Shown: positions 3,201-50,004 of the stretch, in pieces
Numbering within the stretch: position 1 is the stretch's first letter
Layout: each line of letters opens with the position of its first letter
IMG/VR virus record: IMGVR_UViG_3300037264_008423
Location: 124,001 to 188,000 of that record
Length of the DNA: 64,000 nucleotides
Reading direction: 5' to 3' (one strand)
The notes under the pieces: model-generated
What the model saw: the letters and a program-made list of their open reading frames with translations, nothing else
Told to the model about the DNA's origin: nothing
Database searches by the model: none
Translations under genes and position numbers: made by a program

Positions 3201-4766
3201 TTATTGTGGCATGATGAGCAGATTAAAGCCCTGCCCCTGGAGCAGTATGCCGTTGGTGCCCAGCGGCACAGGCGTCGGCGGCGCGTTGGTGGTCGGCGGC
3301 GGGGTAGCCTCGCCTGGGCGCGACCTTAAAACGAAGGCATTGAACAGCGGTCCGGTGTGCGCGGGGGCGCTCGGCAGCCCATCAGGTTTGGCCGCCACGC
3401 GCCCACCCAGGGGCAGCGTGATGGGCTGACCCGTGTATTTGCCCGTAGCCACCGGACCGGCAAACCAATTTTGGGCGTCGCGAACCTCATAGTCCGAGTT
3501 GACGGGAATAGTGGACCCCAGGTTGATGGCGAGCTGCGGTTTAAGGTCCCAGTTGAATACCGCGAGGTTGGCTCGCCCCGTCTCGTAGCGATTGGGCCGG
3601 ATGAAGACCCGGCTGCCGGTTGGCTTACCCTTGGTGTAAACACTGGCGCTGTCGAAGCCCGTCGCGGCCCTCCAATTGGCATAAGTCAGTCCGCGCGACG
3701 CGTTGGTGTAAAACATAAAAGGCAGGTAGGGCGTTTCCAGGCTGTAGTAGGTGTTATAGTTCCAGGTGTGCCGGGTGGGCGACCACGGCAGTTGGGTTTG
3801 GTAGAACTCCAGCAGGTTTCCTGACCGGATAAACGTGTTGCCTATGGCGGTGATGCGCTCCCAGTCCGCGATGCGGCAGAAAACGTGGACAAAATTGTTG
3901 GAAAAGATCAGGTCCAGGCTGCGGCCCAGGACTTCGCCGCACTGGATTCCGCCCAAGGTGTCGTTCGGGAAGTAGAATATATTGTTTACAATCTTTATGT
4001 CCTGGGGCGGATCGCCGCCGTAGATGACAAATTCCCGCGCATTACCCGCGCGCGAAAGGCTGCCATTGTTAAAGGCAATATTGCCGTCCACCAGGTAGTG
4101 GCGCAGAAAAGCGGCGCTGGAGCCGTAAATCTGGATGCCATGATCGTAGCTGTTGAAGACGATGTTCTCCTCGATCTGTTTGCGCCCGGTGTTGTTTTGG
4201 GAATAAACTCCGTGCCCGTGTCCCCGGTCGGAACCTTGGAAGCCGTTATTGTAGATGACGCAGCCGTAAAGGAAGGAATCCGGGCCTTCCGTCCACAGGC
4301 ACGCGCCGTTGCCCAGCGTGTCGTGGATGATCAGGTTGACCAGGCCCACTCCGGGCGCTCTGATATTCAGGGCATCCAACGTTTTTAAATCGGAGGGCCA
4401 TGACCCTGGCTGGCTGGAAGTGTGGTTGGTTTGCCCACCCGCCACTTCAAAGTCGCGGTAGATGACATAGCCGCCTGAGTTTTGGGCAATGCCGCCCACC
4501 ACCCTGGCCCACTCGTTAGTGTGCGAGCGCACGGTAATAGGCAGGGAAGCGTTCCCGGCCAGCGTGCTGTAGAAAATGCCGGTGTAGGACCCGCTCCGCA
4601 GCCAGAGGGTATCGCCCGGCTTTAAACCGGCTTCGAGACCGGTTTGCAGCCCAAAAGGGGCGCTGACACTGCCGGTGCCCGTGCCGCCAGGGGCGGCGTA
4701 GAAATTGGCGGCCAGTGCCGTGCCTGCGCACGCCAGCCCCACGATCAGAGTTAAGATTGATTTCAT
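3201..4766 (-). CDS. Secreted right-handed beta-helix (pectin-lyase-like) protein
   Basis: Signal peptide ending ALA; PGDTLWLRSGSY; repeated N/G-rich beta-helix rungs (GHGVYSQN, NIVFN, GIQIY, NIAFNNG). Confidence 0.75.
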   Translation of the reverse strand: MKSILTLIVGLACAGTALAANFYAAPGGTGTGSVSAPFGLQTGLEAGLKPGDTLWLRSGSYTGIFYSTLAGNASLPITVRSHTNEWARVVGGIAQNSGGYVIYRDFEVAGGQTNHTSSQPGSWPSDLKTLDALNIRAPGVGLVNLIIHDTLGNGACLWTEGPDSFLYGCVIYNNGFQGSDRGHGHGVYSQNNTGRKQIEENIVFNSYDHGIQIYGSSAAFLRHYLVDGNIAFNNGSLSRAGNAREFVIYGGDPPQDIKIVNNIFYFPNDTLGGIQCGEVLGRSLDLIFSNNFVHVFCRIADWERITAIGNTFIRSGNLLEFYQTQLPWSPTRHTWNYNTYYSLETPYLPFMFYTNASRGLTYANWRAATGFDSASVYTKGKPTGSRVFIRPNRYETGRANLAVFNWDLKPQLAINLGSTIPVNSDYEVRDAQNWFAGPVATGKYTGQPITLPLGGRVAAKPDGLPSAPAHTGPLFNAFVLRSRPGEATPPPTTNAPPTPVPLGTNGILLQGQGFNLLIMPQ

Positions 4767-4828
4767 TTGGTTCTTTTCAGTATATTTGATTTTACTCGCG
4801 ATAACTACCAGTATATCTAATCTACACT

Positions 4829-5287
4829 ATGATTCCTAGGAATGATTTTTACGACCGCCTGGAGCACCACTGCCAGCCCTGTTCCGAGTGGGATGGCGTC
4901 TGCCTGCGGGGCCATGACCTGGCTAGTCCGACCGGCTGTCCCTTGCGCAAGTTCGCGCCCGTCCAGGCAGCCAGCTACGACCCGGACCGTGGCCGAGTCG
5001 TTCAGCCTCGGAATCAGCAGGGTTGCTCCGGCTGCGGAGCGGCCATTGACGCGGACGCGCTGCCGCCCATTACCTGGCCCCAGGTGATCGCTAATTTCGC
5101 CGCCTCGATGACCAACTGGATTAGAGCGGGGATGCCGCTGACCGACGCGAACGAGCATGGCCGCCGCTACGGAATTTGCACCCAGTGCCAGTCGCACTTT
5201 AAAGGCTACTACTGCAAGTTATGCCGGTGTGTCTGCTATATCAAAACCAAGCCGCAAACGGAGTATTGCCCCATCGGCAAATGGTGA
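4829..5287 (+). CDS. Cys-rich metal-binding protein (DUF6171-like C-terminus)
   Basis: RYGICTQC...CKLCRCVCYIKTK...CPIGKW, with a related N-terminal RLEHHCQPC...CPLRKF unit. Confidence 0.7.
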   Translation: MIPRNDFYDRLEHHCQPCSEWDGVCLRGHDLASPTGCPLRKFAPVQAASYDPDRGRVVQPRNQQGCSGCGAAIDADALPPITWPQVIANFAASMTNWIRAGMPLTDANEHGRRYGICTQCQSHFKGYYCKLCRCVCYIKTKPQTEYCPIGKW

Positions 5288-5995
5288 TCAAGCAAACCGG
5301 ATGACCGTGAAAGCGCACACTTCGAGCGTGGGCGTGGCGTAGCTCCAACTGAGAAAAGCGTGGTCTTGGGTCAAGGGCTGAGTCGCGCTAAAGGAAAGTC
5401 CGACTAAACGGGTCATATTGGTGATCGTTGTTAAGCCCTGTATCCGCTCGTAAAAGGTCGCCAGGTTTAAATCCAGTATTCCCGCCGCCGTGGTGGGCAG
5501 CCACAGGTCCACGGTAATGGGGGTGGGATTGCCGGTGACATAGGTGCCGCGCGCGATGTCCACAATAATCGGCGCGCGCTGGATCGCTGAGCTGCCGGGG
5601 ACAGGCAGCGCGGGAAGCAGGGCGGTCGATCCGCTGTTATATGACGTTGTAAATACGGAGCCAACTTTTTGAAACGTGGTCGCGCCGGGGGCAGCGGAGG
5701 TCAAGTAGTAGGCTCCGCCGCTGGTTTGAAAGGCCCAGTCCCAGGCGGTCCAACTGCCGGGTCCCGCGCCAATCGCGCTGGTTGTGGAGCCGAGAATCCC
5801 CGACGGTCCGGTCGCCATGCCTAGCGAAATGAGGGGCGCGCTCGTAGGCTGTCTCAAAAGGGAGGCGAGATTGACCTGAATGAGGGCGGCGATGCGGATG
5901 ACATTCCAGTTGCTTCCAAAAGTAACCGGGCGTAGCAGGTCTTCCCGGCCTAGTTGAAGCCGCTGCTCGGTTAAACGCTGAACGATGAAAGCCAT
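5288..5995 (-). CDS. Tandem paralogue 7 of 7, putative virion/receptor-binding beta protein
   Basis: MAFIVQRLTEQRLQLGREDLLRPVTFGSNWNVIRIA...SWSYATPTLEV...RFA. Confidence 0.8.
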   Translation of the reverse strand: MAFIVQRLTEQRLQLGREDLLRPVTFGSNWNVIRIAALIQVNLASLLRQPTSAPLISLGMATGPSGILGSTTSAIGAGPGSWTAWDWAFQTSGGAYYLTSAAPGATTFQKVGSVFTTSYNSGSTALLPALPVPGSSAIQRAPIIVDIARGTYVTGNPTPITVDLWLPTTAAGILDLNLATFYERIQGLTTITNMTRLVGLSFSATQPLTQDHAFLSWSYATPTLEVCAFTVIRFA

Positions 5996-5999
5996 ATGA

Positions 6000-6680
6000 T
6001 TATTGGAATCGAGAAAGGGTGATCTCCTTAACGTGTAAGACCGGCAAGGAACGGCTCCAGCCGATGAAGAAGTGGTCCCAGGCTTGGTTGCCGCTGAAAG
6101 CGAAATTTACTGTATTTACGCCTCCCGCGTTATATGGCGGAGTGGTGGTTTCCATGTTTATCATGTGCTGATAGGAGGTCAGATTGGTCATGACCGCGAG
6201 GTCCACGTGGGGCGAATAAGTGGTGAGTGTGGCTCCCGTGGCAGTTTTGATGAGGTCCAGGTAGAAGCCTGACACGTTGGGGCCGTGGGGTTGTGAAGCG
6301 ACGCGCAAAGCTAAAGAAGTGGTGGTGGTTTGGCTGTAAGCCGGGCCTACCTTTCTCCAAGCGGTAAATCCGGCAGAGTTACATGACTGATAGCGGTCGG
6401 GGCCGGAAGGGACCGTAATCCAGGTCATAGCGTGCGGGTTGGCGGTGCCCCAGGTGATGCCTAACGTGTCCACGCCATCATCCCGGCTTTTACTGTAAGG
6501 CCCCTCGCTGACTCCCAGGTTAAAATCACCGCCCGTAAAACTGGCGCGCGTGGCCATGAACAGGCGCACCCCGATGCGCAGCCAGGTCCAACCGGAACCG
6601 ATGGCCACTGGCCGGACAAAATCTTCCGCCGCCAGCTCCAGGCGTTGATCGCCGACTAAATTTTGAACAATGAAAGCCAT
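6000..6680 (-). CDS. Tandem paralogue 6 of 7
   Basis: Start reassigned to MAFIVQNLVGDQRLELAAEDFVRP...WTWLRIG by alignment to the paralogues. Confidence 0.8.
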   Translation of the reverse strand: MAFIVQNLVGDQRLELAAEDFVRPVAIGSGWTWLRIGVRLFMATRASFTGGDFNLGVSEGPYSKSRDDGVDTLGITWGTANPHAMTWITVPSGPDRYQSCNSAGFTAWRKVGPAYSQTTTTSLALRVASQPHGPNVSGFYLDLIKTATGATLTTYSPHVDLAVMTNLTSYQHMINMETTTPPYNAGGVNTVNFAFSGNQAWDHFFIGWSRSLPVLHVKEITLSRFQ

Positions 6681-6681
6681 G

Positions 6682-7365
6682 TTAATAAAAACGGGTGACG
6701 CAGACCTCACTGACATGCAGCGTCGGCACGCTGCGACCCCAGTGAAGGCAGACGCGGTTGAGGTTAAAGTTGCCGGGGTAGGCGGGAATGTTAATCGGAT
6801 TAAACGCAAGGGACACGGAAGTGGCGTCTTCGGCCTGCATGTCCGCCAGAAAGAGGGAGCGGTCCACGTGCGCGGCGGCGCTGCTGGAGGCTGCCATGCG
6901 CAGCGTAGCTGAGAGTGTCGCGCCGGGCCGACGCGAACTGAAATTGAAATCCACGTAAATCACGCCCAAGTCGGGGCTGAAAGGACCAGCAAGGAGGGTC
7001 GAGCCTCCTGTATAGGCGCTCTGCGTGGAACCCATCCGGTGATAAAGTGTGGAGGGATTGGAGGAGCAGCTCCAGTAGGTGGTGTTGTTAGTGATAGCGA
7101 TGTTGGTGGTAAAAAGCCGCAGGGAGACGGCTTCAATCGGGCTGGGATCAGTGTAGCCCGTGTCTTGGCACAGTCCGATAAAGATGCTGGCCGGGCGGTA
7201 GCAGACACGGCTTCCTCCCACCAGGCCGGAGGGCACGCTCAGGGTGTAGTGCAGGCCCACCCGTATTTTAAGCCACTGGTTGCCGAAGCTCATGGGCCGG
7301 ACAAATTCCTCCCGGCCCAGTTGCAGCGCGCCTTTTTCGATTAAAGATTGGGTGATGAATGCCAT
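6682..7365 (-). CDS. Tandem paralogue 5 of 7
   Basis: Start reassigned to MAFITQSLIEKGALQLGREEFVRPMSFGNQWLKIRVG. Confidence 0.8.
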   Translation of the reverse strand: MAFITQSLIEKGALQLGREEFVRPMSFGNQWLKIRVGLHYTLSVPSGLVGGSRVCYRPASIFIGLCQDTGYTDPSPIEAVSLRLFTTNIAITNNTTYWSCSSNPSTLYHRMGSTQSAYTGGSTLLAGPFSPDLGVIYVDFNFSSRRPGATLSATLRMAASSSAAAHVDRSLFLADMQAEDATSVSLAFNPINIPAYPGNFNLNRVCLHWGRSVPTLHVSEVCVTRFY

Positions 7366-7369
7366 AGAC

Positions 7370-8047
7370 TTATGCAAAACGAACGACCACCAGGTCAAAT
7401 ATCTCGATGGGCTGGGCATTGTCGTTCCAGGACACGGAGACCGAATCAAAGGGATACAGGCCGTTGTAGGGAATGCTCTGCACCGTGGCCCCATCAATGG
7501 CCCAACTGCCGGAGTAGGGGAGCTGGTCCACTTCCAGGAATCGGTAGAACAGGTCCAGGCTCAGATCGGTTTGGGCCTGGACGGCGCTGCCGGGATAGCT
7601 GGTAAGCGTTCCCACGTTATTGGCGGAGAAGTTTTTCATGATGTCCACGAAAAACAAGGACCGGTTGGGCAGAATGGGTCCATAGGCGGCACCGTAGTTG
7701 AAGTCCGAGATGGTGGATACACCGGCGATGCGCTTAATCCGTCGCGCGTATGCCGTGGAGAAATAGGGATTACCGCCTCCGGCGTTATAGGTCCAGGCCA
7801 CGGTCGCGTGGCTCATCTGCGCTCCGATAAACTCCACCGTGTTGGTGCTGCGATAGCCCTCGGCGGTGCCAGCGTTAACGCCTACGACAAATTGAGAGCT
7901 GGCAATGGTGGAACTCATGACCGCGCCCCAGCGCAAACCGATGCGGATGGACTGCCAGTCGGTGCCAAAGCTCAACTGGCGCAAAAATTCCTCATTGCCC
8001 AGTCGCAGCGACTTGCTTCCCACGATGGTTTCGACAATGCTCGCCAT
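7370..8047 (-). CDS. Tandem paralogue 4 of 7
   Basis: MASIVETIVGSKSLRLGNEEFLRQLSFGTDWQSIRIG. Confidence 0.8.
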   Translation of the reverse strand: MASIVETIVGSKSLRLGNEEFLRQLSFGTDWQSIRIGLRWGAVMSSTIASSQFVVGVNAGTAEGYRSTNTVEFIGAQMSHATVAWTYNAGGGNPYFSTAYARRIKRIAGVSTISDFNYGAAYGPILPNRSLFFVDIMKNFSANNVGTLTSYPGSAVQAQTDLSLDLFYRFLEVDQLPYSGSWAIDGATVQSIPYNGLYPFDSVSVSWNDNAQPIEIFDLVVVRFA

Positions 8048-8049
8048 AA

Positions 8050-9375
8050 TCAGTAAGAATAGAAGGTGCCGTAGCTCTGCCAGCCGGTGCCGCCGTCCAG
8101 CAGCGTAATGCTGCCCAGGCTGTAGGAATTAAAATTGTCCCACGGAAATCCGGCGCTGGTTCCGGCCAAGCCCACCTGCGCGGCTTCATTGGGATAGGTG
8201 GTTCCGGCAAAGTATCGGGCATAAAAGGGTCCTGACCAGTTGGTGCCAAGAGCCAGCATGGCCGCGCTGCCGCTTTGATACTGGTCAAAAGTGTCGTCAT
8301 TGCCCACGGTGGTGCCATACCAGTCGTTGGACATGCCCAGGACCGAGCTATTGCTGTAGGTGCCGCCTGACGCGAGCCACGGCCCCGACCAGTTGGTGCC
8401 GCCGTCCAAGCTTCCGCTGACCACGGTCCCCAGGCTATACTGGTCAAAGGAGTCATCCACGCCGGAGCTGGTTCCGGCCAAGCCATAAGTGGTCACCACG
8501 TTGGAGATGCCTTGCAGCACGTAAGGTCCGCTGAAACCGGAGCCGGAGTTTAGGAGCGTGACGGGACCCGGAGCCTGGGACAGAAAGTCATCGAAGCCTC
8601 CGGCCAGAAAGGGGTAGCTGGGTTGAGGAGTTCCCGCGTCCGTATAGACATTGGCGCACACGGCGTAAAGCTCAAGCGGATACGCCTGGTTAGACCAGAA
8701 GATGCTCAAGGTGTCCAGCGCCCCGGTCAATTCGGTTAGTGTCAGAACTTGCGCGGTAGGAGCCGTCCAAGTTTGGCCGGATATGACGGGCGTCCCCATC
8801 TGATCCACGGCGTCCAGGAGATGGTCGGCCCGGTAATCTTCCGTGGCGGCGTTGGCGGGAAAGAAAACCGAGAAGGTGCATTGTCCTGTGGTTGGGTTTT
8901 TGAGTATGTCCAGAACAATAGGGCTGCGACGCTTTTTGATGCCGACCCCCGCGACCGCGAAAATCGGGGTGCTGGCGTGGGTAACCACGGCGGTGGTGTC
9001 CACCCCGTTGGCTGGATTGCGCCAGCGCCGGTAAAAGTTGCCGCTCGCGGCGGGAGAAAAATAGGGGTTGCCCGATCCGGCGAAGTAAGTCCAACTGCGC
9101 CCCGTGCCGCCCACCACAGAGCCGCACACACTGAGGCCGAGGGCGTGCTCGCACAAAATTTTGGACATCGTGTTGGATCGGCCACTGGTTAGCCCCAGGG
9201 TCAGCATTCCGTCATGGAAGGTGGTTGCCGCCGTGCTGCGAAACGCGATCAGCATGCCGATGCGCAAGCGCATCCAGTCGCCCAAGTGACCCAGGGGGCG
9301 GAGCCATTCCTCGCCGCCCAGCAGCAAGGCTTTGTCTGGCACGTAGTTGAAAAATCGGGTGATGATCTGCGCCAT
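8050..9375 (-). CDS. Tandem paralogue 3 of 7 with C-terminal D-x-F-x-x-Y...G-T-x-W-S-G repeats
   Basis: MAQIITRFF...LLLGGEEWLRPL...WMRLRIG; four C-terminal repeats. Confidence 0.8.
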   Translation of the reverse strand: MAQIITRFFNYVPDKALLLGGEEWLRPLGHLGDWMRLRIGMLIAFRSTAATTFHDGMLTLGLTSGRSNTMSKILCEHALGLSVCGSVVGGTGRSWTYFAGSGNPYFSPAASGNFYRRWRNPANGVDTTAVVTHASTPIFAVAGVGIKKRRSPIVLDILKNPTTGQCTFSVFFPANAATEDYRADHLLDAVDQMGTPVISGQTWTAPTAQVLTLTELTGALDTLSIFWSNQAYPLELYAVCANVYTDAGTPQPSYPFLAGGFDDFLSQAPGPVTLLNSGSGFSGPYVLQGISNVVTTYGLAGTSSGVDDSFDQYSLGTVVSGSLDGGTNWSGPWLASGGTYSNSSVLGMSNDWYGTTVGNDDTFDQYQSGSAAMLALGTNWSGPFYARYFAGTTYPNEAAQVGLAGTSAGFPWDNFNSYSLGSITLLDGGTGWQSYGTFYSY

Positions 9376-9379
9376 AGGG

Positions 9380-10084
9380 TTAATATACTCGATACACGGC
9401 CACGCCGTAGATTTCCACAGCCACGTCAAATCGGGTCCAGGAGATCGCCAGAGCGTTGAGCACGCCGGTGCTCTCGTTGAAGGCTCCGGCTTGGGGGCCA
9501 GCCGAGCAGGCTGATAGCGAGACGCTCCCCACGCGGGGCGCGGCGCTATACTGGGCCACGGCTTCCAGCAGATTTTCGTAGGTGAAGTCCAGCACCACCA
9601 GGGAGGCGCTCAGCGATCCGAAGGCGCTGACCGTGTAGTTGGGGCTTCCTTTGGTGATATCAACGATCCAGATGGACCGGCGCGAGAGGCTGCCACTCGT
9701 GGCTGCCGTATAATTGGGATTGCCGTTACCAGCAATATGCGTGGAGATGGAACCTTTGCGGTAGCGGTAGTAAGCCGCGCTCTGGAAGTAAGGATTGCCG
9801 GAGCCAGCAATGTAGGCCAGGGAGTAGGCACCGGCTGGTCCAAAGCCAAAGCCCAGGTAGTTAGGGCAGTTCCAGGACAGCATGCCATAGGGATGGTTGC
9901 AAAGCCCAAAACAAAAGTCGGCGGCGGAAATGGTCGCATTAGCATCGAAAGCCATAAGCAATCCGATCCGCAGCCGAGTCCAGCCAGATCCCACCGTCAG
10001 GGGCCGGACATACTCATCGTTGCGCAGCGCCAGGCAGTGCTGGCTGTTGCCGCTGAAAAATTTTTGGCTGAGGATAAGTGACAT
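9380..10084 (-). CDS. Tandem paralogue 2 of 7
   Basis: LALRNDEYVRPLTVGSGWTRLRIG...FNESTG. Confidence 0.8.
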   Translation of the reverse strand: MSLILSQKFFSGNSQHCLALRNDEYVRPLTVGSGWTRLRIGLLMAFDANATISAADFCFGLCNHPYGMLSWNCPNYLGFGFGPAGAYSLAYIAGSGNPYFQSAAYYRYRKGSISTHIAGNGNPNYTAATSGSLSRRSIWIVDITKGSPNYTVSAFGSLSASLVVLDFTYENLLEAVAQYSAAPRVGSVSLSACSAGPQAGAFNESTGVLNALAISWTRFDVAVEIYGVAVYRVY

Positions 10085-10085
10085 G

Positions 10086-10820
10086 TCAGTTGGTAAGATC
10101 CTGCCAGGTTGCGTAAACGGCTATCCCATAAACCTCCAAGGGCACTGCCGCGTTGGACCAGTAGAGGCTGATACTGTCCACGGGTCCGGTGGATTCGTTG
10201 AAGGCCATAAGTCCGCTATTGTAGGCCACGGCGATCACACTGCCACGCAGAGTCAAGGTGTTTAGCCGCGTTTGATGCACTCCTTCCAGCAGGTCGCTCA
10301 TGCTGTATTCGGTCCGCGCCTCGGCGATGCTGGTGGGAAAGTAAACGGAAGTGGTCCAGTTGGGCGACCCTTTGTAAATGTCCGTAAACATGAATCCGCG
10401 AAATCCCTGTCCCGCCACGGGGTGGTAGCGTGTCCCCCCGTCCGCCCCCGCGTTAAATATCGTGCTACCGCGTCTGCTTGCCACTCCTTTGGCCGCGATG
10501 GAGTAATAGGGTGGAGGACCCGTGTTATACACGGCAGTCGCGGCCCCGTAGTATTCCGTGGCAAGGGTGCCCCCGATCCAGTTGGCGGTGCTGTTGGACT
10601 TCATGCCTTGGGTGTCGTCAATGGGCGAAGCGGACGCGCAGACCCCCAGGCCGTGGCGAGTGATGCTAAAGTTGCCGGAACCCTGGATGGCGTAAAGGAT
10701 GCCAATCCTGATCTTGTTCCAGCCGTTATCCCACTCCAGCTTGCGGACAAATTCCTCGTTGGTCAGGGTGAAGTAAGGATTCACCCCGTCACCAAACGTT
10801 CTGGTAGCAAACGATGACAT
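10086..10820 (-). CDS. Tandem paralogue 1 of 7
   Basis: FTLTNEEFVRKLEWDNGWNKIRIG...FNESTG. Confidence 0.8.
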   Translation of the reverse strand: MSSFATRTFGDGVNPYFTLTNEEFVRKLEWDNGWNKIRIGILYAIQGSGNFSITRHGLGVCASASPIDDTQGMKSNSTANWIGGTLATEYYGAATAVYNTGPPPYYSIAAKGVASRRGSTIFNAGADGGTRYHPVAGQGFRGFMFTDIYKGSPNWTTSVYFPTSIAEARTEYSMSDLLEGVHQTRLNTLTLRGSVIAVAYNSGLMAFNESTGPVDSISLYWSNAAVPLEVYGIAVYATWQDLTN

Positions 10821-10821
10821 A

Positions 10822-11736
10822 CTATAAAATAGCTCCTGTGCTGGACCAACCCGCTCCCGCGTCGATGTAACCGGGCGTTACCGATCCGTCCGCGTAGGCG
10901 ATCAGGCTGTCCTCGGCCTTGTGCAGAGCCACGGTTCCCGCCGTCCAGGCGGCGCTCCAGTAGGTGCCGCTGTTTAAGGTTCCAGGGGCCAATACCGGCC
11001 CATAGACAGTGCCATAAGTGGTGTAGGCTACCAGCGTGTCCGTGGCCACGAAGCTCAGGGGAGAGTTAAGCGGGTCAGACACCGGGCCGTTAATGCTGGC
11101 GGTGCCATACCAGTGGCTCATTAAGCCCAGTTCGCCTAGTCCACCGGTGGGTCCGTCCGCGTAGTGCTCAAATGTTTCGATGCCGTAGGCGGAGTCGCCA
11201 AAGGCGCAAATGAGACCGTTTTGGATTTGGACGGCCAGATCCGCCCGGTTGGAATTGGGAATTTGAGCCAGGTAAATCGTGTGCGTGCCCGTGCCAGCCA
11301 GCCCTAGCGTGGTGCCCAGCCAAGCCAGGACAAAGGAGTTGAGCAGCGTGCCTTGAACGGCCAGCGCGAAAGCGGCATTGGCCCCGGAAGTGCCGCTCGT
11401 AGCGATATGGTTGACCTGGCTGACGCCGGTGGTGCCGTTCCAGGCGGTTGTCAAGGCGGTGACGGCCACGTTATTGGTGGTGGGATCGAAGCTAGTGACC
11501 TCGGTCCAGTTGCCGTTGAGCGTTCCGCCCACCAGCCGAAACTCCTGCTGGGTGATCGAGACGTAGCAGGTCATGCCCTCGGCGCGGCGCTCGGCGGAAA
11601 TTCCATCGCGGTCCGCCAAGGTTTGGACTGTGTGGTGTCCGCCCCGGATCTCGCTTGTGTCCGCTACCGGAAACGTATTGACGGTGTTACCGGTGGTGAC
11701 TTTCGCTGCTAAAATTGTTCCAGGAATCGCGGCCAT
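10822..11736 (-). CDS. Tail-fibre-associated protein
   Basis: N-terminal RGGHHTV.TLADRDGI..ERR.EGM..YV module typical of phage fibre proteins; shares TAWNGT and GT.WS repeats with its neighbours. Confidence 0.65.
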   Translation of the reverse strand: MAAIPGTILAAKVTTGNTVNTFPVADTSEIRGGHHTVQTLADRDGISAERRAEGMTCYVSITQQEFRLVGGTLNGNWTEVTSFDPTTNNVAVTALTTAWNGTTGVSQVNHIATSGTSGANAAFALAVQGTLLNSFVLAWLGTTLGLAGTGTHTIYLAQIPNSNRADLAVQIQNGLICAFGDSAYGIETFEHYADGPTGGLGELGLMSHWYGTASINGPVSDPLNSPLSFVATDTLVAYTTYGTVYGPVLAPGTLNSGTYWSAAWTAGTVALHKAEDSLIAYADGSVTPGYIDAGAGWSSTGAIL

Positions 11737-11737
11737 A

Positions 11738-12778
11738 TCAGCTTACGACAATTTGATAAGTTCCGGTCAGCAGGTTATCGGACCGATACAGGTTATAGCT
11801 GCTTGCGTAACCGGAAGCATTGGTAAAGGAAATAACCGTCAAAGTCCAGGCGGTATTGGGCAGCCCGTTGACCGTGAACGTGGCCGCGCCCCAGGCCGCT
11901 GGATAAGCAAAGTAAACATACTCGGCGGCTGCTGTGAGGGTCCGGCTCTGGCTCCGGCTGCTGGCAAATTCGCCGTTCAGGGCGATGATTTGCGCGTCAT
12001 TCAAGGTGGATTGGTTGGAGACGCCCCAGTAACGCTTGTTACTGAAGCTGATGCTGGTATTGCCGTTGACGGGAGTGGTGCCATCCGTGGCGCTGAGTGT
12101 GTAGGTCCGGTTCGCGGTCCAGGTTCCCGCGTCCGCGTAGCTGCGCTGGGCTACAGGGAGCACCCCGATGCCCTGGTTGATCGACTGACCGGTGACATCC
12201 TTGTTGAACACCCAGTTGAGCGTGACACTGCTGACCGTTTGGCCAATTTCCACCGTGCCGACTGTATTTGTAAACGAAGTCAACTGGAGCGGCACGTAGA
12301 GCAGGTAATTGAGCGCGGCGGCCACGTTCGGGTAATCGAGGCTGGAATAAGGAACATCAACGGCGGAAATCTGGTTGGTTCCGGTGCCGAAGTCAACGTG
12401 GTTGAGATGGACGGTCCGGTCCTCGTCGCGGATGTAGTCCAGCGATCCGACCATCTGGTAAGTGGTCCAGGCCAAGTTGCTGCCGGAGACCGCGATGCTT
12501 TCCACGGCGGCGATCTCGGCCCGGATCTCGACAAAAGGATCGGCGGGTCCCTGGCTGATCATGGCCAGGGCGGACCAGTAGTCGGAATGGTTGCCTTCCG
12601 GGGCGGTGCCGGATACCGAGATTAAGGCAATGTATTTGGCTCCCTGGAAATCAATGGCATCGCGGGGACTATAGGTGCCTGAGTCGGCGTAGGTGCCGCG
12701 CAAGCGCAACTCGGACTCGGCCACGACGGTGCGCCGGTAAAGATGATCCGCGTATGCATATTGGTTTAGAGACGCCAT
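11738..12778 (-). CDS. Virion structural/tail-fibre-associated protein
   Basis: Start MASLNQY (GTAAGTA upstream); CBM5/12-like RGTY...Y...GAKYIAL...YW module; beta-rich C-terminus YVYFAYPAAWG. Confidence 0.65.
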   Translation of the reverse strand: MASLNQYAYADHLYRRTVVAESELRLRGTYADSGTYSPRDAIDFQGAKYIALISVSGTAPEGNHSDYWSALAMISQGPADPFVEIRAEIAAVESIAVSGSNLAWTTYQMVGSLDYIRDEDRTVHLNHVDFGTGTNQISAVDVPYSSLDYPNVAAALNYLLYVPLQLTSFTNTVGTVEIGQTVSSVTLNWVFNKDVTGQSINQGIGVLPVAQRSYADAGTWTANRTYTLSATDGTTPVNGNTSISFSNKRYWGVSNQSTLNDAQIIALNGEFASSRSQSRTLTAAAEYVYFAYPAAWGAATFTVNGLPNTAWTLTVISFTNASGYASSYNLYRSDNLLTGTYQIVVS

Positions 12779-12795
12779 CACTTTACTTACATGGA

Positions 12796-13533
12796 TTAAG
12801 GTGGTTGTGAAACCCTGCCGATGACCTGGCCTGTGCGTGTCTGAGTGAGTCCGCCCACGGTTTCTGTCCAAGCGCCCGTCAGAGCGCCGCCCGTGGGCGC
12901 GTCATTCATGGGGCAAAAGAGTAACAGGTTAGCGAGTTCAATGGTAGGAGGAAGATTTCTTGCGCCTGTGGCCAGGGAGAGGATTTGCGCGTCGGATAGC
13001 TGTTTATTCCAGATGGCAGCGTCGCACATGTAGCCGGAAAAATTAACAGTAGTGCTGCCGTTGTCCACGGCAATCCACCAATCATTGCCGCTTCCCCATA
13101 AGGTTGTAATGGGAGAGGGGGTGCCCTCTTGCGCGCCATTCACGTAAAGCCGCATCTGACCTCCATTTTTGGCGCTCACCGTCACATGATACCAGGTATT
13201 TACGGCGACTACAGTCGTGCCATAGACGTTCTTTACGCTGCCATCGTAGGTGTAGGCAATCCAGTTAGTCGCGCCGTTTTGGTGCATCGCGTGGGACCAC
13301 CCGCTGCTAGGGTCGCCCCCGCTGCGCGTAAAAATACCGGCATTATTCAAAACTTGGGCCGGTCTTAGCCACGCGGCCAGTGTGTATTCCGTGGGAGTGG
13401 CCGTCATACCGCCGCCGAAAAAGCGAGTGTAAACAGATCCACTAAAGTCATATACCCGGCTTTCGGCCACGGGCGCTGCTGCCGCTCTGGCCAGGGAGCC
13501 GACAAAAGAAGGATTACGCAGGCTTAAGCTCAT
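12796..13533 (-). CDS. LamG/concanavalin-A-like lectin domain protein
   Basis: YTLAAWLRP, NTWYHVTV, RLYVNG, FSGYMCDAAIWNKQLSDAQI. Confidence 0.85.
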   Translation of the reverse strand: MSLSLRNPSFVGSLARAAAAPVAESRVYDFSGSVYTRFFGGGMTATPTEYTLAAWLRPAQVLNNAGIFTRSGGDPSSGWSHAMHQNGATNWIAYTYDGSVKNVYGTTVVAVNTWYHVTVSAKNGGQMRLYVNGAQEGTPSPITTLWGSGNDWWIAVDNGSTTVNFSGYMCDAAIWNKQLSDAQILSLATGARNLPPTIELANLLLFCPMNDAPTGGALTGAWTETVGGLTQTRTGQVIGRVSQPP

Positions 13534-14957
13534 GCTTCGGACGTGGGAGCGCCAATTAAACTAACGGGAGCGTCATTGATACAGGTGAGCGCGAGGAGCA
13601 CGTCTTTAGTGTAAATCTGGCTGGGGGGAGTGGTTCCAAACCACTTGGTGGAGGCAATCTCTCCGCCCATGTAAAGCGGATGAACCACGTCATCCGCTTG
13701 CAGTATCACCGCGATTTCCGCGCCTTTACGGTAGTTTGTGCCGCTGACGGTCAGCGCGCCATTGACGCTCATCTGCTGGTAGGCGGGACCGGTAAAATTG
13801 GCGTAGAGGGTGCCAGCATACCCGGTGGTTCCCACGCCGACAATGGTATTGGGCACGACCAAGTTGCCGGTCATAGTGCCTCCCGCCGAGAAATTCGGCG
13901 AGCTGTTCTGACTGCTGTATGCCAGCCAGGCCAGGTTGCTGCCGGTGGTCGCTAGATTAAAAGCGTTGGTGCCCACGTTGGTGCCGATGGCGGCTAAGCT
14001 GTAGGCGGACTGGGCGAGACCGCGCGCGGTATTGTCCACGCCAGCCTCCGTTAGAGTGCCAATCCAGGTAATGGCCAGGTTTGCAAGCGCGGTTCCCGCC
14101 ACGGCTATGGGATGGGTCTGGTCCACGCCTGCGGTGCCAGATTGCGCCAGGTCATAGGCGCTCTGCGCCAGACTCAAAGCCGTTCCGCTGCCGCCACTGG
14201 CCGCCAGGGCATAGGCTTGTTCGGCGCGGTTACTGCCTGCTTCAGCCAGCACGTAGGCGGTGGTGCCCACGTTGGTGCCGATGGCCGCCAGATCATAGGC
14301 GCTCTGCGCCAAGGAGCGTGCCAGGCTGTCCACGCCGGAAGCGGCGAGGGTGCCGATCCAGGTGATCGCCAAGCCAGCCAGGTTTGTGCCGGTTTCCGCG
14401 ATAGGATACACCTGTTGAACGCCAGAAGTTCCATTCCAAGCCGTCTGGAGAGCCTGGTAGGCGGTTTGGTCGGCGGCTAGCGATGTGGTGAACGCTCCAT
14501 TGGCTAGGATTGTGGCGGTGTCGGCGCTGCTTTGGGCGTTGGTCCCGGCGTAGTAGGCGGCCAGCGCCAGGTTTGTTCCCGCTGCCGCGATCATCAGGGC
14601 GGTGTCGGCGGTTTCCGTGCCGGTTTGGGCCAGAGCCAGCGCCTCGTCCGCGACCGCTTGCGCCTCGGCGGCGGCGTTGGTTCCCGCTACGGCCAGCGCG
14701 TAGGCTTTTTCTTCGACGGTGGGAACGACCGTTTCTTTGAAGAGGACCAACTGCGCCCACATGCGCTGGCGCACAATGGCGCTGGGTGCGCTGTTGGTGC
14801 TGGCGACGATAGAAACGTAGTAGGCCCCGCCGTGAGATACCGATTCCCACGGTGGAGCGTAAAGAGTGCCTGGTGCCCACGTGCCGCGCCAGTTTAACTC
14901 TCCGTCAGACACATAAGTCGTGGTGCGACTTAAATTGCTATAGGCATAAACCGCCAT
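13530..14957 (-). CDS. Tail fibre protein with Ala/Gly/Thr repeats
   Basis: N-terminal WRGTW...Y...GGAYYVS module; repeated LAQSAYxLAxxGTN; GGTMTGNL fibre motif. Confidence 0.75.
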   Translation of the reverse strand: MAVYAYSNLSRTTTYVSDGELNWRGTWAPGTLYAPPWESVSHGGAYYVSIVASTNSAPSAIVRQRMWAQLVLFKETVVPTVEEKAYALAVAGTNAAAEAQAVADEALALAQTGTETADTALMIAAAGTNLALAAYYAGTNAQSSADTATILANGAFTTSLAADQTAYQALQTAWNGTSGVQQVYPIAETGTNLAGLAITWIGTLAASGVDSLARSLAQSAYDLAAIGTNVGTTAYVLAEAGSNRAEQAYALAASGGSGTALSLAQSAYDLAQSGTAGVDQTHPIAVAGTALANLAITWIGTLTEAGVDNTARGLAQSAYSLAAIGTNVGTNAFNLATTGSNLAWLAYSSQNSSPNFSAGGTMTGNLVVPNTIVGVGTTGYAGTLYANFTGPAYQQMSVNGALTVSGTNYRKGAEIAVILQADDVVHPLYMGGEIASTKWFGTTPPSQIYTKDVLLALTCINDAPVSLIGAPTSEA

Positions 14958-14977
14958 GCCCTAATTACGTTTCAATC

Positions 14978-15006
14978 CGCGCCCCGCATTTTTTGACCGG
15001 GGCGCG
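14978..15006. terminator. GC-rich hairpin, possible terminator
   Basis: CGCGCCCCG...CGGGGCGCG between the early block and the fibre operon; lacks a clear U-tract. Confidence 0.4.
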
Positions 15007-47441: not shown

Positions 47442-47560
47442 TCACACCCGAAGACAACCCGGTGAACGAGAAAATGCTGCGCCGCCATGCGCGGCAAGTG
47501 CAGACCAAACTCAAAAGGATGTTTGGCACAGATGAAAGCGGCGAACCGCGCGCCGCTTAA
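47438..47560 (+). CDS. 40-aa hypothetical peptide
   Basis: MITPEDNPVNEKMLRRHARQVQTKLKRMFGTDESGEPRAA; ATGA-coupled; not in the track. Confidence 0.45.
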   Translation: MITPEDNPVNEKMLRRHARQVQTKLKRMFGTDESGEPRAA

Positions 47561-50004
47561 TCCTCGATCCGGTCCAAGGGGGGGCGCTGGCGACGGCGGC
47601 GCAGGCGGTGTCCTGGCCGCTCGCCGCCTTGGTCTTCCTCTGGCCGCCATTCCAGCTTCTCCAGAATGCTCATGGTCATGCTGCGCGGTTCCACGTTGCC
47701 CCGGAAGTGCTGATAGGCGGTCCCATGCCGATTCAGAAATACGAAGTAACGGATGATGTTTTGGGCATACTCGTCGTCCGTGGCGCACAGGCCAATGGCC
47801 ACGTCCACAATTCCCGCCTTCTCAAACGATCCCTGGAAGCTCTTCATGCTGGGCACCGCCAGGTCCACCGTTTCCTTGTTGCACCGGTCGGGCAGGATGA
47901 CCGGGCAGCCAAATTCGGAACCCAGGGCGCGCGCTTCCAGATAAATCTCACCCTGGGCGCGCCACTCGCTGGTCCGCTTGGGATCGGAACTGGGCTTTAC
48001 GGTTTCGGCGAAGTCGATGATGATGGCCTTGGGTTTGACGCCGAAGCGCGCGCTGGCAGTCAGCGCATGGGAGCGGATGTCGCCGCTAATCGTGGCCGCG
48101 CGCGAGGGAAAGCCTTTGATCAGCAGGGTGGAATTAAGCCTTTCGTTGGCCATTTGCAAGGCTTTTTCCGTAAACGTTTTCTTGTTCTGGTAGATCATGT
48201 CAAACGGCAGATCGGTCAGATTGCAGAGACAGCGCACGGCGGCAAGCTCCTGGCTGATCTCGCAGGGATAGTAGAACACGGGGGAGCCGGTGTTCTCGAT
48301 CATGTTCATGGCCAGGTTGATGCAGAAGGCGGTGTTATGGGTGACCGTGAAGTCGCTGTGCAGGTAGCGGCGATTTCCGTCGATTTCTATGCCAAACCAC
48401 TCTTGGTTGCCTACTGGCGCTACTTTTATCGTTGTTCTGTCCGAGGCTTTTTTAGAATCGGTTCCGTGCTTCCTGGCAACCTTGGTTGGAATTTCGCTGA
48501 TTCGGCCCTGAACATAAGTTCTATAGGCGATTGAGAATATCTTTTTTCCTTTTACGATGCATTGGCTGCGAAACGGGCGTATGAAGCTTTTAAAGCCTAA
48601 ACTTCTAGCAAGCCAGCAAGTATCTTCGCATAGCAGTCGGTTTGTGTCTGTAAAAATGAATCCACGGTTATTGGCGTGGCTACCGTCACTGTCAATTAGT
48701 CCGGCCAACAGTCGCAGGCGTGTGGCTTGGCTATTTATTTTGTAAACAAATGGGATATGCTTGTTGCGCAGGAGATTTAAAGCGCGCAGTCCGTTTATGA
48801 TCGGATTTTGGCCTTTGCCCTGTCCAACGAGAGACACCTGCGTGCAGCGCGTTTTCTTTCTATAGGTGGTTACGCGTAACCCTGCCTTAGTGGCAAAGTC
48901 GTGTAGAAAAGGCGTAATTTCCGGGTCATCGTCCCCTACGCTTATAGAAGCTTCATGCGAACTGCCATCCCCAAGCCAAAGACCAAGAAAATAAGGATCT
49001 AACGGCACGCTCACTGCGGGGAAGTCAACTCTGACTTTGTAACCTTTCCAATCTCGGTGGAAGTTTGCTGATTTTTTCGCATAGTCTTCAGCCGTAATCT
49101 CCAGAATTTCACCCAAGTGATACCTGTCTGTAAACCTTCCAACCGGCACCGTGCCCGGTGGTCTTTTCACACAGAGAATGTGGTCGTGGGTGACCGTATA
49201 GCTGTCGCCGTTTGCTTGGGTGACCCGATACATAGGGGCGCAGCCCCGGCCACAACTAAGCACGTTGCGGGGTGTTCCGTCGTCTCCCATGATTTTATCT
49301 CCGGGAGCAAGCTGGCAAATTTGTTTAATGGTGCCGTCAAACATTAGTATCTGCGTGTCAGGGCTTTCACATTTATATCTTTTAGGCGGAGCTAAAATTG
49401 CAATGAGCCAGCCGGGACCCCAGCCAAAGGGCCAGATGCGGTCCAGATCTCCAAAGCCAGTCTGGATGCCGTAGTCGCGCTTGGTCACGGTGTCCAGGAC
49501 CAGTTGGATGTCGCTCTCCCCGGATTTGATGCGGTAGCCAATGTCTTTGAGGTTCTGCCCCACTTTGAGCGCGTCCTCGAACAGTTTGGTAAACCCACCA
49601 GGGGGAGCCTCACCGGTTTTGTGGTAATTGATGGCTTTGTCGCAGGCGATGTAGAGGGCGCGCTCCCGCGCGAACTCCACGGTCTTTTCCACCGCGTAAT
49701 CCACGTCCGACGTGTCCAGCGTGGTGATCTTGCGCACAAAGGCCATGATGTTGCCTTCCTCCTTGGCGTCGGAGGACCGCAAGATGGCGTCGTAAACAAT
49801 TTGGCTGAGGGCTTCAGGCTGAGGGAAACGTCCGTTTTTATTCCAGTAGGCGAAGAGCGCGCGCGCTGTGGCCACACGCGGCACGCTGGTAAAATAGGCG
49901 GAGTTCAACGTTCCCGCGTTGTGCATGAACCTTTCCGGGTGCGCGATAATCGACGCCAGGAGCAGGTCTTGGAACGAACCGTCGTATGAGTATTTTTCAA
50001 ACAT
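47557..50004 (-). CDS. Replicative DnaB/gp41-like helicase, intein-containing
   Basis: TGFGDLD, APPKRYK/T P-loop, IKGFP, IIIDFAE, SFEKAGIVD, NRHG. Confidence 0.85.
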   Translation of the reverse strand: MFEKYSYDGSFQDLLLASIIAHPERFMHNAGTLNSAYFTSVPRVATARALFAYWNKNGRFPQPEALSQIVYDAILRSSDAKEEGNIMAFVRKITTLDTSDVDYAVEKTVEFARERALYIACDKAINYHKTGEAPPGGFTKLFEDALKVGQNLKDIGYRIKSGESDIQLVLDTVTKRDYGIQTGFGDLDRIWPFGWGPGWLIAILAPPKRYKCESPDTQILMFDGTIKQICQLAPGDKIMGDDGTPRNVLSCGRGCAPMYRVTQANGDSYTVTHDHILCVKRPPGTVPVGRFTDRYHLGEILEITAEDYAKKSANFHRDWKGYKVRVDFPAVSVPLDPYFLGLWLGDGSSHEASISVGDDDPEITPFLHDFATKAGLRVTTYRKKTRCTQVSLVGQGKGQNPIINGLRALNLLRNKHIPFVYKINSQATRLRLLAGLIDSDGSHANNRGFIFTDTNRLLCEDTCWLARSLGFKSFIRPFRSQCIVKGKKIFSIAYRTYVQGRISEIPTKVARKHGTDSKKASDRTTIKVAPVGNQEWFGIEIDGNRRYLHSDFTVTHNTAFCINLAMNMIENTGSPVFYYPCEISQELAAVRCLCNLTDLPFDMIYQNKKTFTEKALQMANERLNSTLLIKGFPSRAATISGDIRSHALTASARFGVKPKAIIIDFAETVKPSSDPKRTSEWRAQGEIYLEARALGSEFGCPVILPDRCNKETVDLAVPSMKSFQGSFEKAGIVDVAIGLCATDDEYAQNIIRYFVFLNRHGTAYQHFRGNVEPRSMTMSILEKLEWRPEEDQGGERPGHRLRRRRQRPPLDRIED
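48334..49371 (-). mobile_element. Intein (346 aa) with LAGLIDADG homing endonuclease
   Basis: Begins CESPDTQILMFDG, block B TVTHDH, LGLWLGDG and LLAGLIDSDG, ends VTHN followed by Thr; AT-richer than the extein. Confidence 0.95.

What the first reader, a model, noticed from the sequence alone, without database searches (positions are those of the whole stretch)
5288..10820. Seven tandem, highly diverged paralogues at the end of the tail-fibre operon
Seen: seven genes 1-4 nt apart share the N-terminal pattern L.L..E(E/D)(F/Y/W/L)(V/L)R.....W..(I/L)R(I/V)(G/A), a central hydrophobic-D-hydrophobic strand, and a C-terminal W......(L/I/V)(E/H)(V/I/L) pattern. The middles are variable and rich in G/S/T and aromatics. 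Neighbours resemble each other most (FNESTG in 1-2, GNPYF in 2-4, MAFI in 5-7), which suggests serial duplication. They follow fibre and LamG genes. Inference: an unannotated family of lectin-like beta-sandwich tips, giving either a multi-receptor repertoire or a hetero-oligomeric appendage.
Basis: partly seen in the sequence, partly recalled or inferred. Interest (0 to 1): 0.68.

Follow-up and report, generated by a model that had tools for sequence, protein, structure and literature searches.

The report
Tandem lectin-fold genes behind phage tail fibres
An uncultured 238-kb sediment phage carries seven old, diverged copies of an unnamed lectin-fold protein directly behind its tail-fibre genes, most likely add-on sugar-binding heads for the fibres, and the same unannotated family forms arrays of 6 to 13 or more genes in related metagenomic phages.

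Summary
Seven minus-strand genes (5288-10820), 1-4 nt apart, are true paralogues: 15-30% identity, E 4e-7 to 7e-15, and no other copies in the 238-kb phage genome. No Pfam, PHROG or NCBIfam model matches them. A profile search found about 1,800 cluster representatives, so this is a large unnamed family. AlphaFold2 gives a confident beta-sandwich (pLDDT 89) of the concanavalin A-like lectin/glucanase fold (Z 10-12 to L-type lectins, CBM66 and alginate lyases, also phage baseplate and receptor-binding domains).

- Gene 3 is twice as long. Its C-terminal ~50-aa repeats also end the fibre protein encoded just upstream.
- The seven copies have one-to-one orthologues in two relatives (33-51% identity), so the duplications are old and each copy is kept.
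- Copies fall into three classes in a fixed order: fibre, B copies, one long A copy, C copies.

One relative fuses a collagen-like stalk, one repeat and the domain in a single protein.

Best reading: stand-alone lectin-fold heads mounted on repeat-bearing fibre ends. Virion location, sugar binding and docking are inferred, not shown. The single complex prediction gave no verdict.

The parts
10086..10820 (-). g1, 244 aa, class B copy of the lectin-fold family
   Evidence: ORF; family HMM E 3e-68; orthologues in L008 and L015
9380..10084 (-). g2, 234 aa, class B copy
8635..9375 (-). g3 core (residues 1-247), class A copy of the family domain
   Evidence: The AF2 model of full g3 gives the same beta-sandwich for residues 1-245. 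Class A has SH-aLRT 99.
8050..8634 (-). g3 C-terminal extension (residues 248-441): one weak and three strong repeats of about 50 aa, motif D.F..Y..G(T/S)...G..W
   Evidence: Repeat HMM, domain E 5e-16 to 7e-10. Not folded as a monomer, pLDDT under 50. No Pfam or PDB match.
7370..8047 (-). g4, 225 aa, class C copy; this is the modelled protein
   Evidence: AF2 pLDDT 88.9, pTM 0.88; fold searches
6682..7365 (-). g5, 227 aa, class C copy
6000..6680 (-). g6, 226 aa, class C copy
   Evidence: Short metatranscriptome contigs lie here.
5288..5995 (-). g7, 235 aa, class C copy and last gene of the array
10822..11736 (-). f304, a 304-aa fibre-like protein directly upstream of g1. Its last ~120 residues (10825-11178) hold three copies of the same repeat found in the g3 extension.
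   Evidence: N-terminal end matches PHROG tail and virion proteins weakly. Repeats. The C-terminal part is 45% identical to the end of the 716-aa fibre of L008.
11738..12778 (-). f346, a fibre-like protein (ATG at 12778; the longer TTG frame reaches 12871)
   Evidence: PHROG 5073 tail fibre, E 1e-4. Its N-terminal end is 58% identical to that of L008_716. Start codon.
12796..13533 (-). LamG-domain protein, 245 aa
   Evidence: PF13385 Laminin_G_3, E 2e-22. No profile similarity to the seven-copy family.
13530..14957 (-). f475, a fibre-like protein with an alanine- and glycine-rich repeated shaft
   Evidence: 37% identical over 379 aa to L008_716; shaft repeats

Best explanation
The seven genes encode stand-alone domains of about 230 aa with the concanavalin A-like (lectin/glucanase) beta-sandwich fold. 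They belong to a large, unnamed, phage-borne family. I propose that they are late-expressed virion proteins mounted on the distal ends of the tail fibres, where they act as accessory host-adhesion (sugar-binding) heads. In this reading the conserved N- and C-terminal strands form the common framework and mounting face. The variable middle gives each copy its own stable specificity. The proposed mounting sites are the ~50-aa D.F..Y..G...G..W repeats that end the fibre protein f304 and the long copy g3. The order fibre, B copies, A copy, C copies would then describe a two-tier, branched adhesin. What is shown: paralogy, fold, family size, old one-to-one orthology, class order, the shared repeat and the collagen-repeat-domain fusion in a relative. 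What is inferred: virion location, carbohydrate binding, and docking on the repeats. The docking step alone I put at about 0.3.
For: Paralogy and exact gene structure are established. The fold is supported by the AF2 model of g4 (pLDDT 88.9, pTM 0.88) and by the same sandwich in the g3 core. VIA-align gives Z 10-12 over 160-180 residues to L-type lectins (5zbt, 1r1z) and CBM66. It also matches phage host-recognition parts: mycobacteriophage Douge baseplate 8zdo (Z 11.0), TM4 gp23 receptor-binding domain 9n6a (Z 10.4) and phage J-1 Dit CBM2 5ly8 (Z 9.4). Foldseek hits are lectins and galectins. The context is a fibre module: the array directly follows three fibre-like genes and a LamG gene. In seven other loci, family genes likewise lie directly behind a long fibre-like protein, and in L018 the run is followed by a weak holin match. 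In L012 a single polypeptide carries 15 Gly-X-Y triplets, one repeat and then the domain at its C-terminal end, that is, a collagen-like stalk with this domain as its head. The repeat occurs in only two proteins of the 238-kb genome, f304 and g3, and each directly precedes family genes. The same adjacency holds in L008, L011, L014, L015, L016 and L017. All seven copies have orthologues in L008 and L015 at 33-51% identity. Orthologues share 37% identity in the variable middle, against 19% for paralogues. They evolve at the pace of the fibres (37-58%) and faster than flanking genes (62-73%).
Against: There is no direct evidence that any copy is in the virion, and no cultured relative exists (best PolA identity 27%). 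The fold is shared with polysaccharide lyases and glycosidases at equal Z, and no sugar-binding site was identified. The f304 C-end plus g1 complex prediction gave no verdict. The repeat region does not fold as a monomer, so it may simply be a trimeric shaft. The number of repeats does not match the number of following copies in general: L017 has 3 repeats and at least 8 copies, and the L011 fibre has 3 repeats and 5 copies. Class order along the array is also what plain tandem duplication would leave. In L018 the proteins preceding family genes show no detectable repeat.
Confidence: 0.5

Rival explanations
1. They are virion-borne or secreted polysaccharide-degrading enzymes of the beta-jelly-roll type (like PL7, PL14 or PL18 lyases, or GH16). 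Seven depolymerases with different substrate clefts would clear capsule or biofilm matrix.
For: Alginate lyases (3a0n, 5gmt, 6kcv, 2cws, 1vav) and GH16 enzymes match the model at Z 9-11, as well as lectins do. Several charged residues are conserved across 168 members: E19, E20, R23, R35, R129, D135, D161, D201, E215 and R223.
Against: No lyase or glycosidase profile matches any copy (Pfam, NCBIfam). By my knowledge of PL7 the catalytic set needs His, Gln and Tyr. No His or Gln is conserved in the family, and the two conserved Tyr reach only 75-78%. The conserved residues sit in the terminal framework strands, not in the variable middle, where a cleft would be tuned. A separate beta-helix protein that could serve as a depolymerase lies nearby.
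Confidence: 0.12
2. They are structural or assembly parts with no ligand binding of their own. They could be building blocks of a hetero-oligomeric fibre segment or knob, or fibre-folding chaperones that may not stay in the virion.
For: They lie immediately downstream of fibre genes with coupled starts, as tail-fibre assembly genes usually do. All seven are retained one-to-one in relatives, as expected for fixed parts of one assembly. The very N-terminus (M1, A2, I4) is conserved in over 80% of members, which would suit strand insertion into a neighbour.
Against: No match to known fibre chaperone families. Copy number varies from 1 to at least 13 between loci, which is hard to fit with a fixed stoichiometric structure. 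The L012 fusion puts the domain at the distal end of a collagen-like stalk, the usual place of a binding head.
Confidence: 0.2
3. They are not virion-related. They could be intracellular or cell-surface proteins of the infected host, for example for superinfection exclusion or surface remodelling, that merely sit beside the fibre genes.
For: No proteomic evidence places them in the virion. One single copy lies near an integrase in a bacterial MAG contig (L014).
Against: There is no signal peptide-like or membrane segment in the sequences (read directly). They have the same strand and coupled starts as the fibre genes. They share a repeat with the fibre's C-terminal end. One relative fuses the domain to a collagen-like stalk.
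Confidence: 0.07

Closest known systems
Carbohydrate-binding modules of siphophage adhesion devices (evolved Dit and Tal insertions, accessory BppA; PDB 5ly8; reviews PMC7291167, PMC7533335)
   Same: Beta-sandwich modules of the same fold class that add saccharide binding to the phage host-recognition apparatus. Phage J-1 Dit CBM2 matches the model at Z 9.4, the Douge baseplate chain at Z 11.0 and the TM4 gp23 receptor-binding domain at Z 10.4.
   Different: Apart from BppA, those modules are insertions or domains within baseplate proteins of small siphophages of Gram-positive hosts and mycobacteria. Here the domains are stand-alone proteins in arrays of 7 to 13 or more genes behind the fibres of a jumbo phage. 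There is no sequence similarity.
Branched multi-RBP complexes (Ackermannviridae TSP1-4, PMC11414711; Alcyoneusvirus RaK2/phiK64-1, PMC10253068; KP32-type branching domain plus docking peptide, PMC13352976)
   Same: Several receptor-binding proteins encoded side by side. Some carry sites on which the next ones dock, so one virion shows many specificities. The long copy g3 (a domain plus a fibre-like repeat end) would play the role of a branching adaptor.
   Different: Those systems use large trimeric beta-helix tailspikes with enzymatic activity and defined N-terminal anchor domains. Here the units are ~230-aa lectin-fold domains, and docking is only hypothesised. The complex prediction gave no verdict.
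L-type (legume-like) lectins, ERGIC-53/VIP36/Emp47p, and galectins
   Same: These are the best structural matches: 5zbt Z 12.1, 1r1z Z 11.7, 2a6z Z 10.8, galectins Z 9-10. Size and strand order are the same.
   Different: Sequence identity is 5-12% and there is no profile match. The Ca2+ and sugar-binding residues were not identified. Membership as homologues is untested.
Pfam Laminin_G_3 (PF13385) proteins of phage tails, including the window's own LamG gene 12796-13533
   Same: Same superfamily fold, same fibre module. In L015 a LamG protein carries the same C-terminal repeats and is followed by a family copy.
   Different: No Pfam hit for any of the seven, and profile-profile comparison with the neighbouring LamG proteins finds nothing (probability 0.1).

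Membership tests
Concanavalin A-like lectin/glucanase fold (superfamily level) | Two-sheet curved beta-sandwich (jelly roll) of about 200-240 residues with adjacent N- and C-terminal strands | tested here: met
   The AF2 model has pLDDT 88.9. VIA-align gives Z 10-12 over 160-180 residues with rmsd about 3 A to many members. Foldseek probability is 1.0 but TM only 0.40-0.45. ESM Atlas TM is 0.5-0.65.
Pfam Laminin_G_3 (PF13385) | Score above the Pfam gathering threshold, or profile-profile similarity | tested here: not met
   No hit at E up to 1 for any of the seven copies. hhalign against the neighbouring LamG proteins gives probability 0.1.
L-type lectins (legume lectin, ERGIC-53) | Conserved Ca2+/Mn2+ ligands and the Asp/Asn/Gly sugar-binding triad in the concave sheet | not tested
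Only fold-level similarity is shown.
Polysaccharide lyases PL7/PL14 and GH16 | Conserved catalytic residues (PL7: Arg, Gln, His, Tyr; GH16: E.D..E), recalled from my own knowledge | tested here: inconclusive
   No conserved His or Gln, and no E.D..E motif, among the residues conserved in at least 70% of 168 members. No family profile hit. No structural superposition of active sites was done.
Branched phage RBP systems | A conserved docking segment on secondary RBPs that binds a branching site on a primary RBP | tested here: inconclusive
   A conserved N-terminus (M1, A2, I4 in over 80% of members) and a repeat-bearing fibre end next to the genes fit the pattern. The complex prediction scored 0.28 against a mark of 0.32, which is no verdict.
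Branched phage RBP systems | Presence of all units in the virion | not testable with these tools
   The phage is uncultured and no proteome exists.
Tail-fibre assembly chaperones (Tfa, gp38-like) | Sequence family membership | tested here: not met
   No Pfam, PHROG or NCBIfam match.
Collagen-like phage fibre with globular C-terminal head (applies to relative L012 only) | A run of Gly-X-Y triplets N-terminal to the head domain | tested here: met
   15 consecutive Gly-X-Y triplets at residues about 44-88 of the 372-aa protein. The Pfam Collagen match is E 3e-4, below the gathering score. The family domain lies at residues 145-373.

The most novel reading that the evidence does not exclude
The ~50-aa D.F..Y..G...G..W repeats are docking modules, and the ~230-aa lectin-fold proteins are plug-in heads. 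Fibre ends, and the long class A copies that carry a new set of repeats, would recruit stand-alone heads. The phage would then build a tiered, branched multi-lectin adhesin whose size grows by duplicating repeats and genes: 1 copy in small elements, 7 here, at least 13 in relatives. This would be a new assembly principle for phage host recognition, carried by a family of about 1,800 clusters with no annotation.
Probability: 0.2. Interest if true: 0.75.

Novelty: new variant of a known kind. Interest (0 to 1): 0.55.

Why it matters
Host recognition is the least predictable part of uncultured phage genomes. This work defines a large lectin-fold family that no annotation library names, about 1,800 clusters at 50% identity. 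It marks the end of the fibre module in a lineage of sediment jumbo phages and comes in ordered arrays of up to 13 or more genes. If the copies are sugar-binding heads, each genome carries a readable list of distinct and stable glycan specificities. The shared repeat would then be a new handle for working out how multi-headed adhesins are assembled. A profile for the family and for the repeat would improve annotation of thousands of metagenomic proteins at once.

Tried and rejected
- **Named families and solved structures.** Pfam, PHROGs and NCBIfam gave no match for the seven proteins. The PDB profile search gave only a chance-level hit (E 2.3). The repeat region has no PDB match. Neither the extensions of the long copies nor the long upstream proteins of L008, L011 and L012 have a Pfam match.
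- **Cultured phages.** Neither DNA nor protein similarity was found.
- **IMG/VR scans.** The seven-copy alignment was too diverged to make patterns. The orthologue alignment found no confirmed relative.
- **Atlas searches.** These gave nothing usable for g4 or for the g3 extension.
- **Homology to the neighbouring LamG proteins.** Rejected (hhalign probability 0.1).
- **The repeat as a copy of the family's N-terminal hairpin.** Not supported (8 columns, E 0.12).
- **One repeat docks one copy.** The counts match in the window (3 repeats then 3 copies; 4 then 4) and in several other places. They fail in L017 (3 repeats, at least 8 copies), the L011 fibre (3, 5), L015 (6, 4) and L016 (3, 2). Rejected as a rule.
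- **Complex prediction of the f304 C-terminal end with g1.** No verdict (ipSAE 0.34, 0.28, 0.23 against a mark of 0.32). This is not evidence either way.
- **AF2 of full-length g3.** The extension is unfolded as a monomer, so its fold stays unknown.
- **Recent gene conversion or a diversity-generating element.** There are no long DNA repeats in 4800-15000.
- **Promoter and terminator scan.** Nothing above shuffled expectation.
- **Tandem Repeats Finder.** Nothing relevant.
- **Conduct of the work.** Only genetic code 11 was used.
Full report
**Setting.** The window is bases 124001-188000 of a 238,436-bp IMG/VR virus record that CheckV rates 96% complete. The source is a sediment metagenome. 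The window also holds a family A DNA polymerase, an NAD-dependent ligase, a DnaB-like helicase with an intein and a baseplate J-like gene. The phage is far from every cultured phage: the best PolA identity is 27%, and neither the fibre region nor g4 gives any hit.

**Observation.** Seven minus-strand genes fill 5288-10820:
- g1 10086-10820 (244 aa)
- g2 9380-10084 (234 aa)
- g3 8050-9375 (441 aa)
- g4 7370-8047 (225 aa)
- g5 6682-7365 (227 aa)
- g6 6000-6680 (226 aa)
- g7 5288-5995 (235 aa)

Each starts with ATG, 1-4 nt after the previous stop, and none has a recognisable Shine-Dalgarno motif. Pairwise identity is 15-30%. With g4 as query, the other six are found in the whole genome at E 7e-15 to 4e-7, and nothing else is found. 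A family HMM gives the same seven. No long DNA repeats link the copies. The main omission is that g3 is twice the length of the others.

**Fold.** No Pfam, PHROG or NCBIfam model matches any copy. I built a 35-sequence alignment of the seven copies and their metagenomic relatives. With it, AlphaFold2 gives g4 a confident all-beta model (pLDDT 88.9, pTM 0.88). The core of g3 folds the same way. VIA-align against 48,161 PDB representatives gives Z 10-12 over 160-180 residues. The matches are L-type lectins (5zbt, ERGIC-53 1r1z, Emp47p), CBM66, the Aap lectin domain, galectins, and PL14/PL7 alginate lyases. Three phage host-recognition parts also match: the Douge baseplate (8zdo, Z 11.0), the TM4 gp23 receptor-binding domain (9n6a, Z 10.4) and phage J-1 Dit CBM2 (5ly8, Z 9.4). 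Foldseek agrees, though with low TM-scores of 0.40-0.45. In BFVD one unnamed viral protein matches at TM 0.84 and is a true family member. The fold is thus the concanavalin A-like lectin/glucanase sandwich. Sequence-level kinship to the neighbouring LamG proteins is not detectable.

**Family size.** The word-based search found only 11 relatives outside the window's own genome. The exhaustive profile search found 1,794 representatives of 50%-identity clusters at E up to 1e-3, of which 1,474 are at 1e-10 or better and 491 at 1e-30 or better. Among the best 150, most are stand-alone proteins of 208-254 aa. A minority are 335-696 aa with the domain at the very N-terminus. The few that carry a source name are called hypothetical.

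**Arrays in relatives.**
- L008 and L015 carry the same seven genes in the same order behind a fibre of about 710 aa, with the third copy long (490 and 548 aa).
- An ENA contig has two short copies, a 696-aa copy and then seven more of family size.
- L011 has 13 copies, three of them long.
- L016, L017 and L018 have 6, at least 13, and 6 copies.
- L014, a bacterial MAG contig with an integrase, has a single copy.
- L012 has a single copy fused behind other modules.

**Old duplications and fixed classes.** In a 36-row maximum-likelihood tree, each window copy pairs with one L008 copy at 99-100% bootstrap. A 61-row tree puts all nine long copies into one clade, class A (SH-aLRT 99). Every copy lying between the fibre and a long copy falls on the B side (89). 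Every copy downstream of a long copy falls into class C (91). The window reads fibre, B, B, A, C, C, C, C. L011 reads B x4 followed by (A, C, C) x3. Orthologues among the window, L008 and L015 are 33-51% identical. Their terminal strands share 56% identity and their middles 37%, against 33% and 19% for paralogues. Each copy is therefore kept with its own conserved middle. They diverge about as fast as the fibres (37-58%) and faster than flanking genes (62-73%).

**The repeat.**
- *What it is.* The g3 extension (residues 248-441) consists of one weak and three strong repeats of about 50 aa, with the motif D.F..Y..G(T/S)...G..W.
- *Where it occurs.* The same repeat occurs three times at the C-terminal end of f304, the fibre-like protein encoded directly upstream of g1. 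In the whole genome only these two proteins have it.
- *Same pattern in relatives.* In the relatives whose DNA I could read, the same pattern recurs, with one exception. Fibre ends carry three repeats (L008, L011, L015, L016, L017) and every long copy carries 2-9. An L015 LamG protein ends with two repeats and is followed by an extra family copy. The 128-aa protein before the single L014 copy ends with one repeat. The exception is L018, where the proteins preceding family genes show no detectable repeat.
- *The L012 fusion.* In L012 one polypeptide carries 15 Gly-X-Y triplets, one weakly scoring repeat (E 0.014) and then the domain at its C-terminal end.
- *What is unknown.* The repeat region has no match in Pfam or PDB and does not fold as a monomer (pLDDT under 50).

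**Interpretation.**
- *What points to fibre heads.* The fold, the position at the end of the fibre module, the coupled starts, the fibre-like rate of change and the L012 fusion together point to virion-borne accessory adhesion heads with lectin-like function. In the L012 fusion a trimer-forming stalk carries the domain where a binding head normally sits.
- *The mounting idea.* Repeat-bearing ends are tightly associated with family genes, and the very N-terminus and a set of charged residues in the terminal strands are conserved. This suggests that all copies share one mounting mode and that the repeats may be the mounting sites. The long class A copy would then act as a second-tier adaptor.
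- *Limits of the docking step.* This part is a hypothesis. The only complex prediction allowed (f304 C-terminal end with g1) gave no verdict. A simple rule of one repeat per copy fails in several loci. The repeats could equally be an ordinary trimeric shaft.
- *Rivals not excluded.* The fold also fits enzymes. The conserved residues include no His or Gln, and no lyase or glycosidase profile matches, which lowers that rival but does not exclude it. A purely structural or chaperone role, or a non-virion role, cannot be excluded without proteomics.

**Expression hint.** A sediment metatranscriptome from a different study holds short contigs at 96-100% identity on g6, g4 and g1/g2. This shows that the phage or a close relative occurs there. 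It does not prove transcription, since DNA can contaminate such libraries and contigs carry no strand or level.

**Comparison and novelty.** The closest known systems are the carbohydrate-binding modules of siphophage adhesion devices (PMC7291167, PMC7533335) and branched multi-RBP complexes (PMC11414711, PMC10253068, PMC13352976). The present case shares with them the fold class and the logic of many binding units on one apparatus. It differs in four ways: the units are stand-alone ~230-aa lectin-fold proteins, they form ordered arrays of three old classes, they are associated with a novel repeat, and they belong to a large family that no library names. I rate it a new variant of a known kind, of moderate interest. 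It would be of high interest if the repeat-docking model proves true.

Noticed in passing
window 47557-50004 (-): A DnaB-like helicase gene is interrupted by an intein, with Hint domain PF05203 and LAGLIDADG homing endonuclease PF05204/PF14528.
   Followed up: no
window 3201-4766 (-): A 521-aa protein has weak right-handed beta-helix and pectate-lyase PelN-like matches at its N-terminal end. It may be a depolymerase tailspike just beyond the array. Relatives L008 and L015 carry a sigma-54 activator gene at the corresponding place.
   Followed up: partly
window 4829-5287 (+): A 152-aa gene converges on the end of the array. In L008 and L011 it is confirmed by sequence (62% and 47% identity). 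Genes of matching size (147-153 aa) sit at or near the array's end in L008, L011, L015 and the ENA contig. Only a PHROG of unknown function matches.
   Followed up: partly
window 5288-14957: None of the 11 genes has a Shine-Dalgarno-like motif in the 30 nt before its start. In the seven-copy array, starts follow the previous stop by 1-4 nt, which suggests coupled translation or a host with weak SD use.
   Followed up: no
window 13530-14957 and 10822-11736; L008:3086-5236: The fibre-like proteins share a second, alanine/glycine-rich shaft repeat (about 42 aa, motif TAWNGT.GV.QV..IA..GTN). The single 716-aa fibre of L008 corresponds to parts of three separate window genes (f475, f346, f304), so the window's fibre set arose by duplication or splitting.
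   Followed up: partly
L015:4699-6365 and L018:4597-6240: In two relatives a LamG protein is followed at once by a basal, separate copy of the family. The L015 LamG protein ends with two of the fibre-end repeats, whereas the window's LamG protein has no repeat and no such copy behind it.
   Followed up: partly
P0108 (ENA contig, 696 aa), residues 462-541: Two adjacent repeats are identical over their 29-aa core, which indicates a very recent repeat expansion in that lineage.
   Followed up: no
window 6014-6445, 7435-7842, 9985-10643: Short contigs of a sediment metatranscriptome from a second study match these places at 96-100% identity. This shows that a near-identical phage occurs elsewhere. 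Transcription is not proven.
   Followed up: partly
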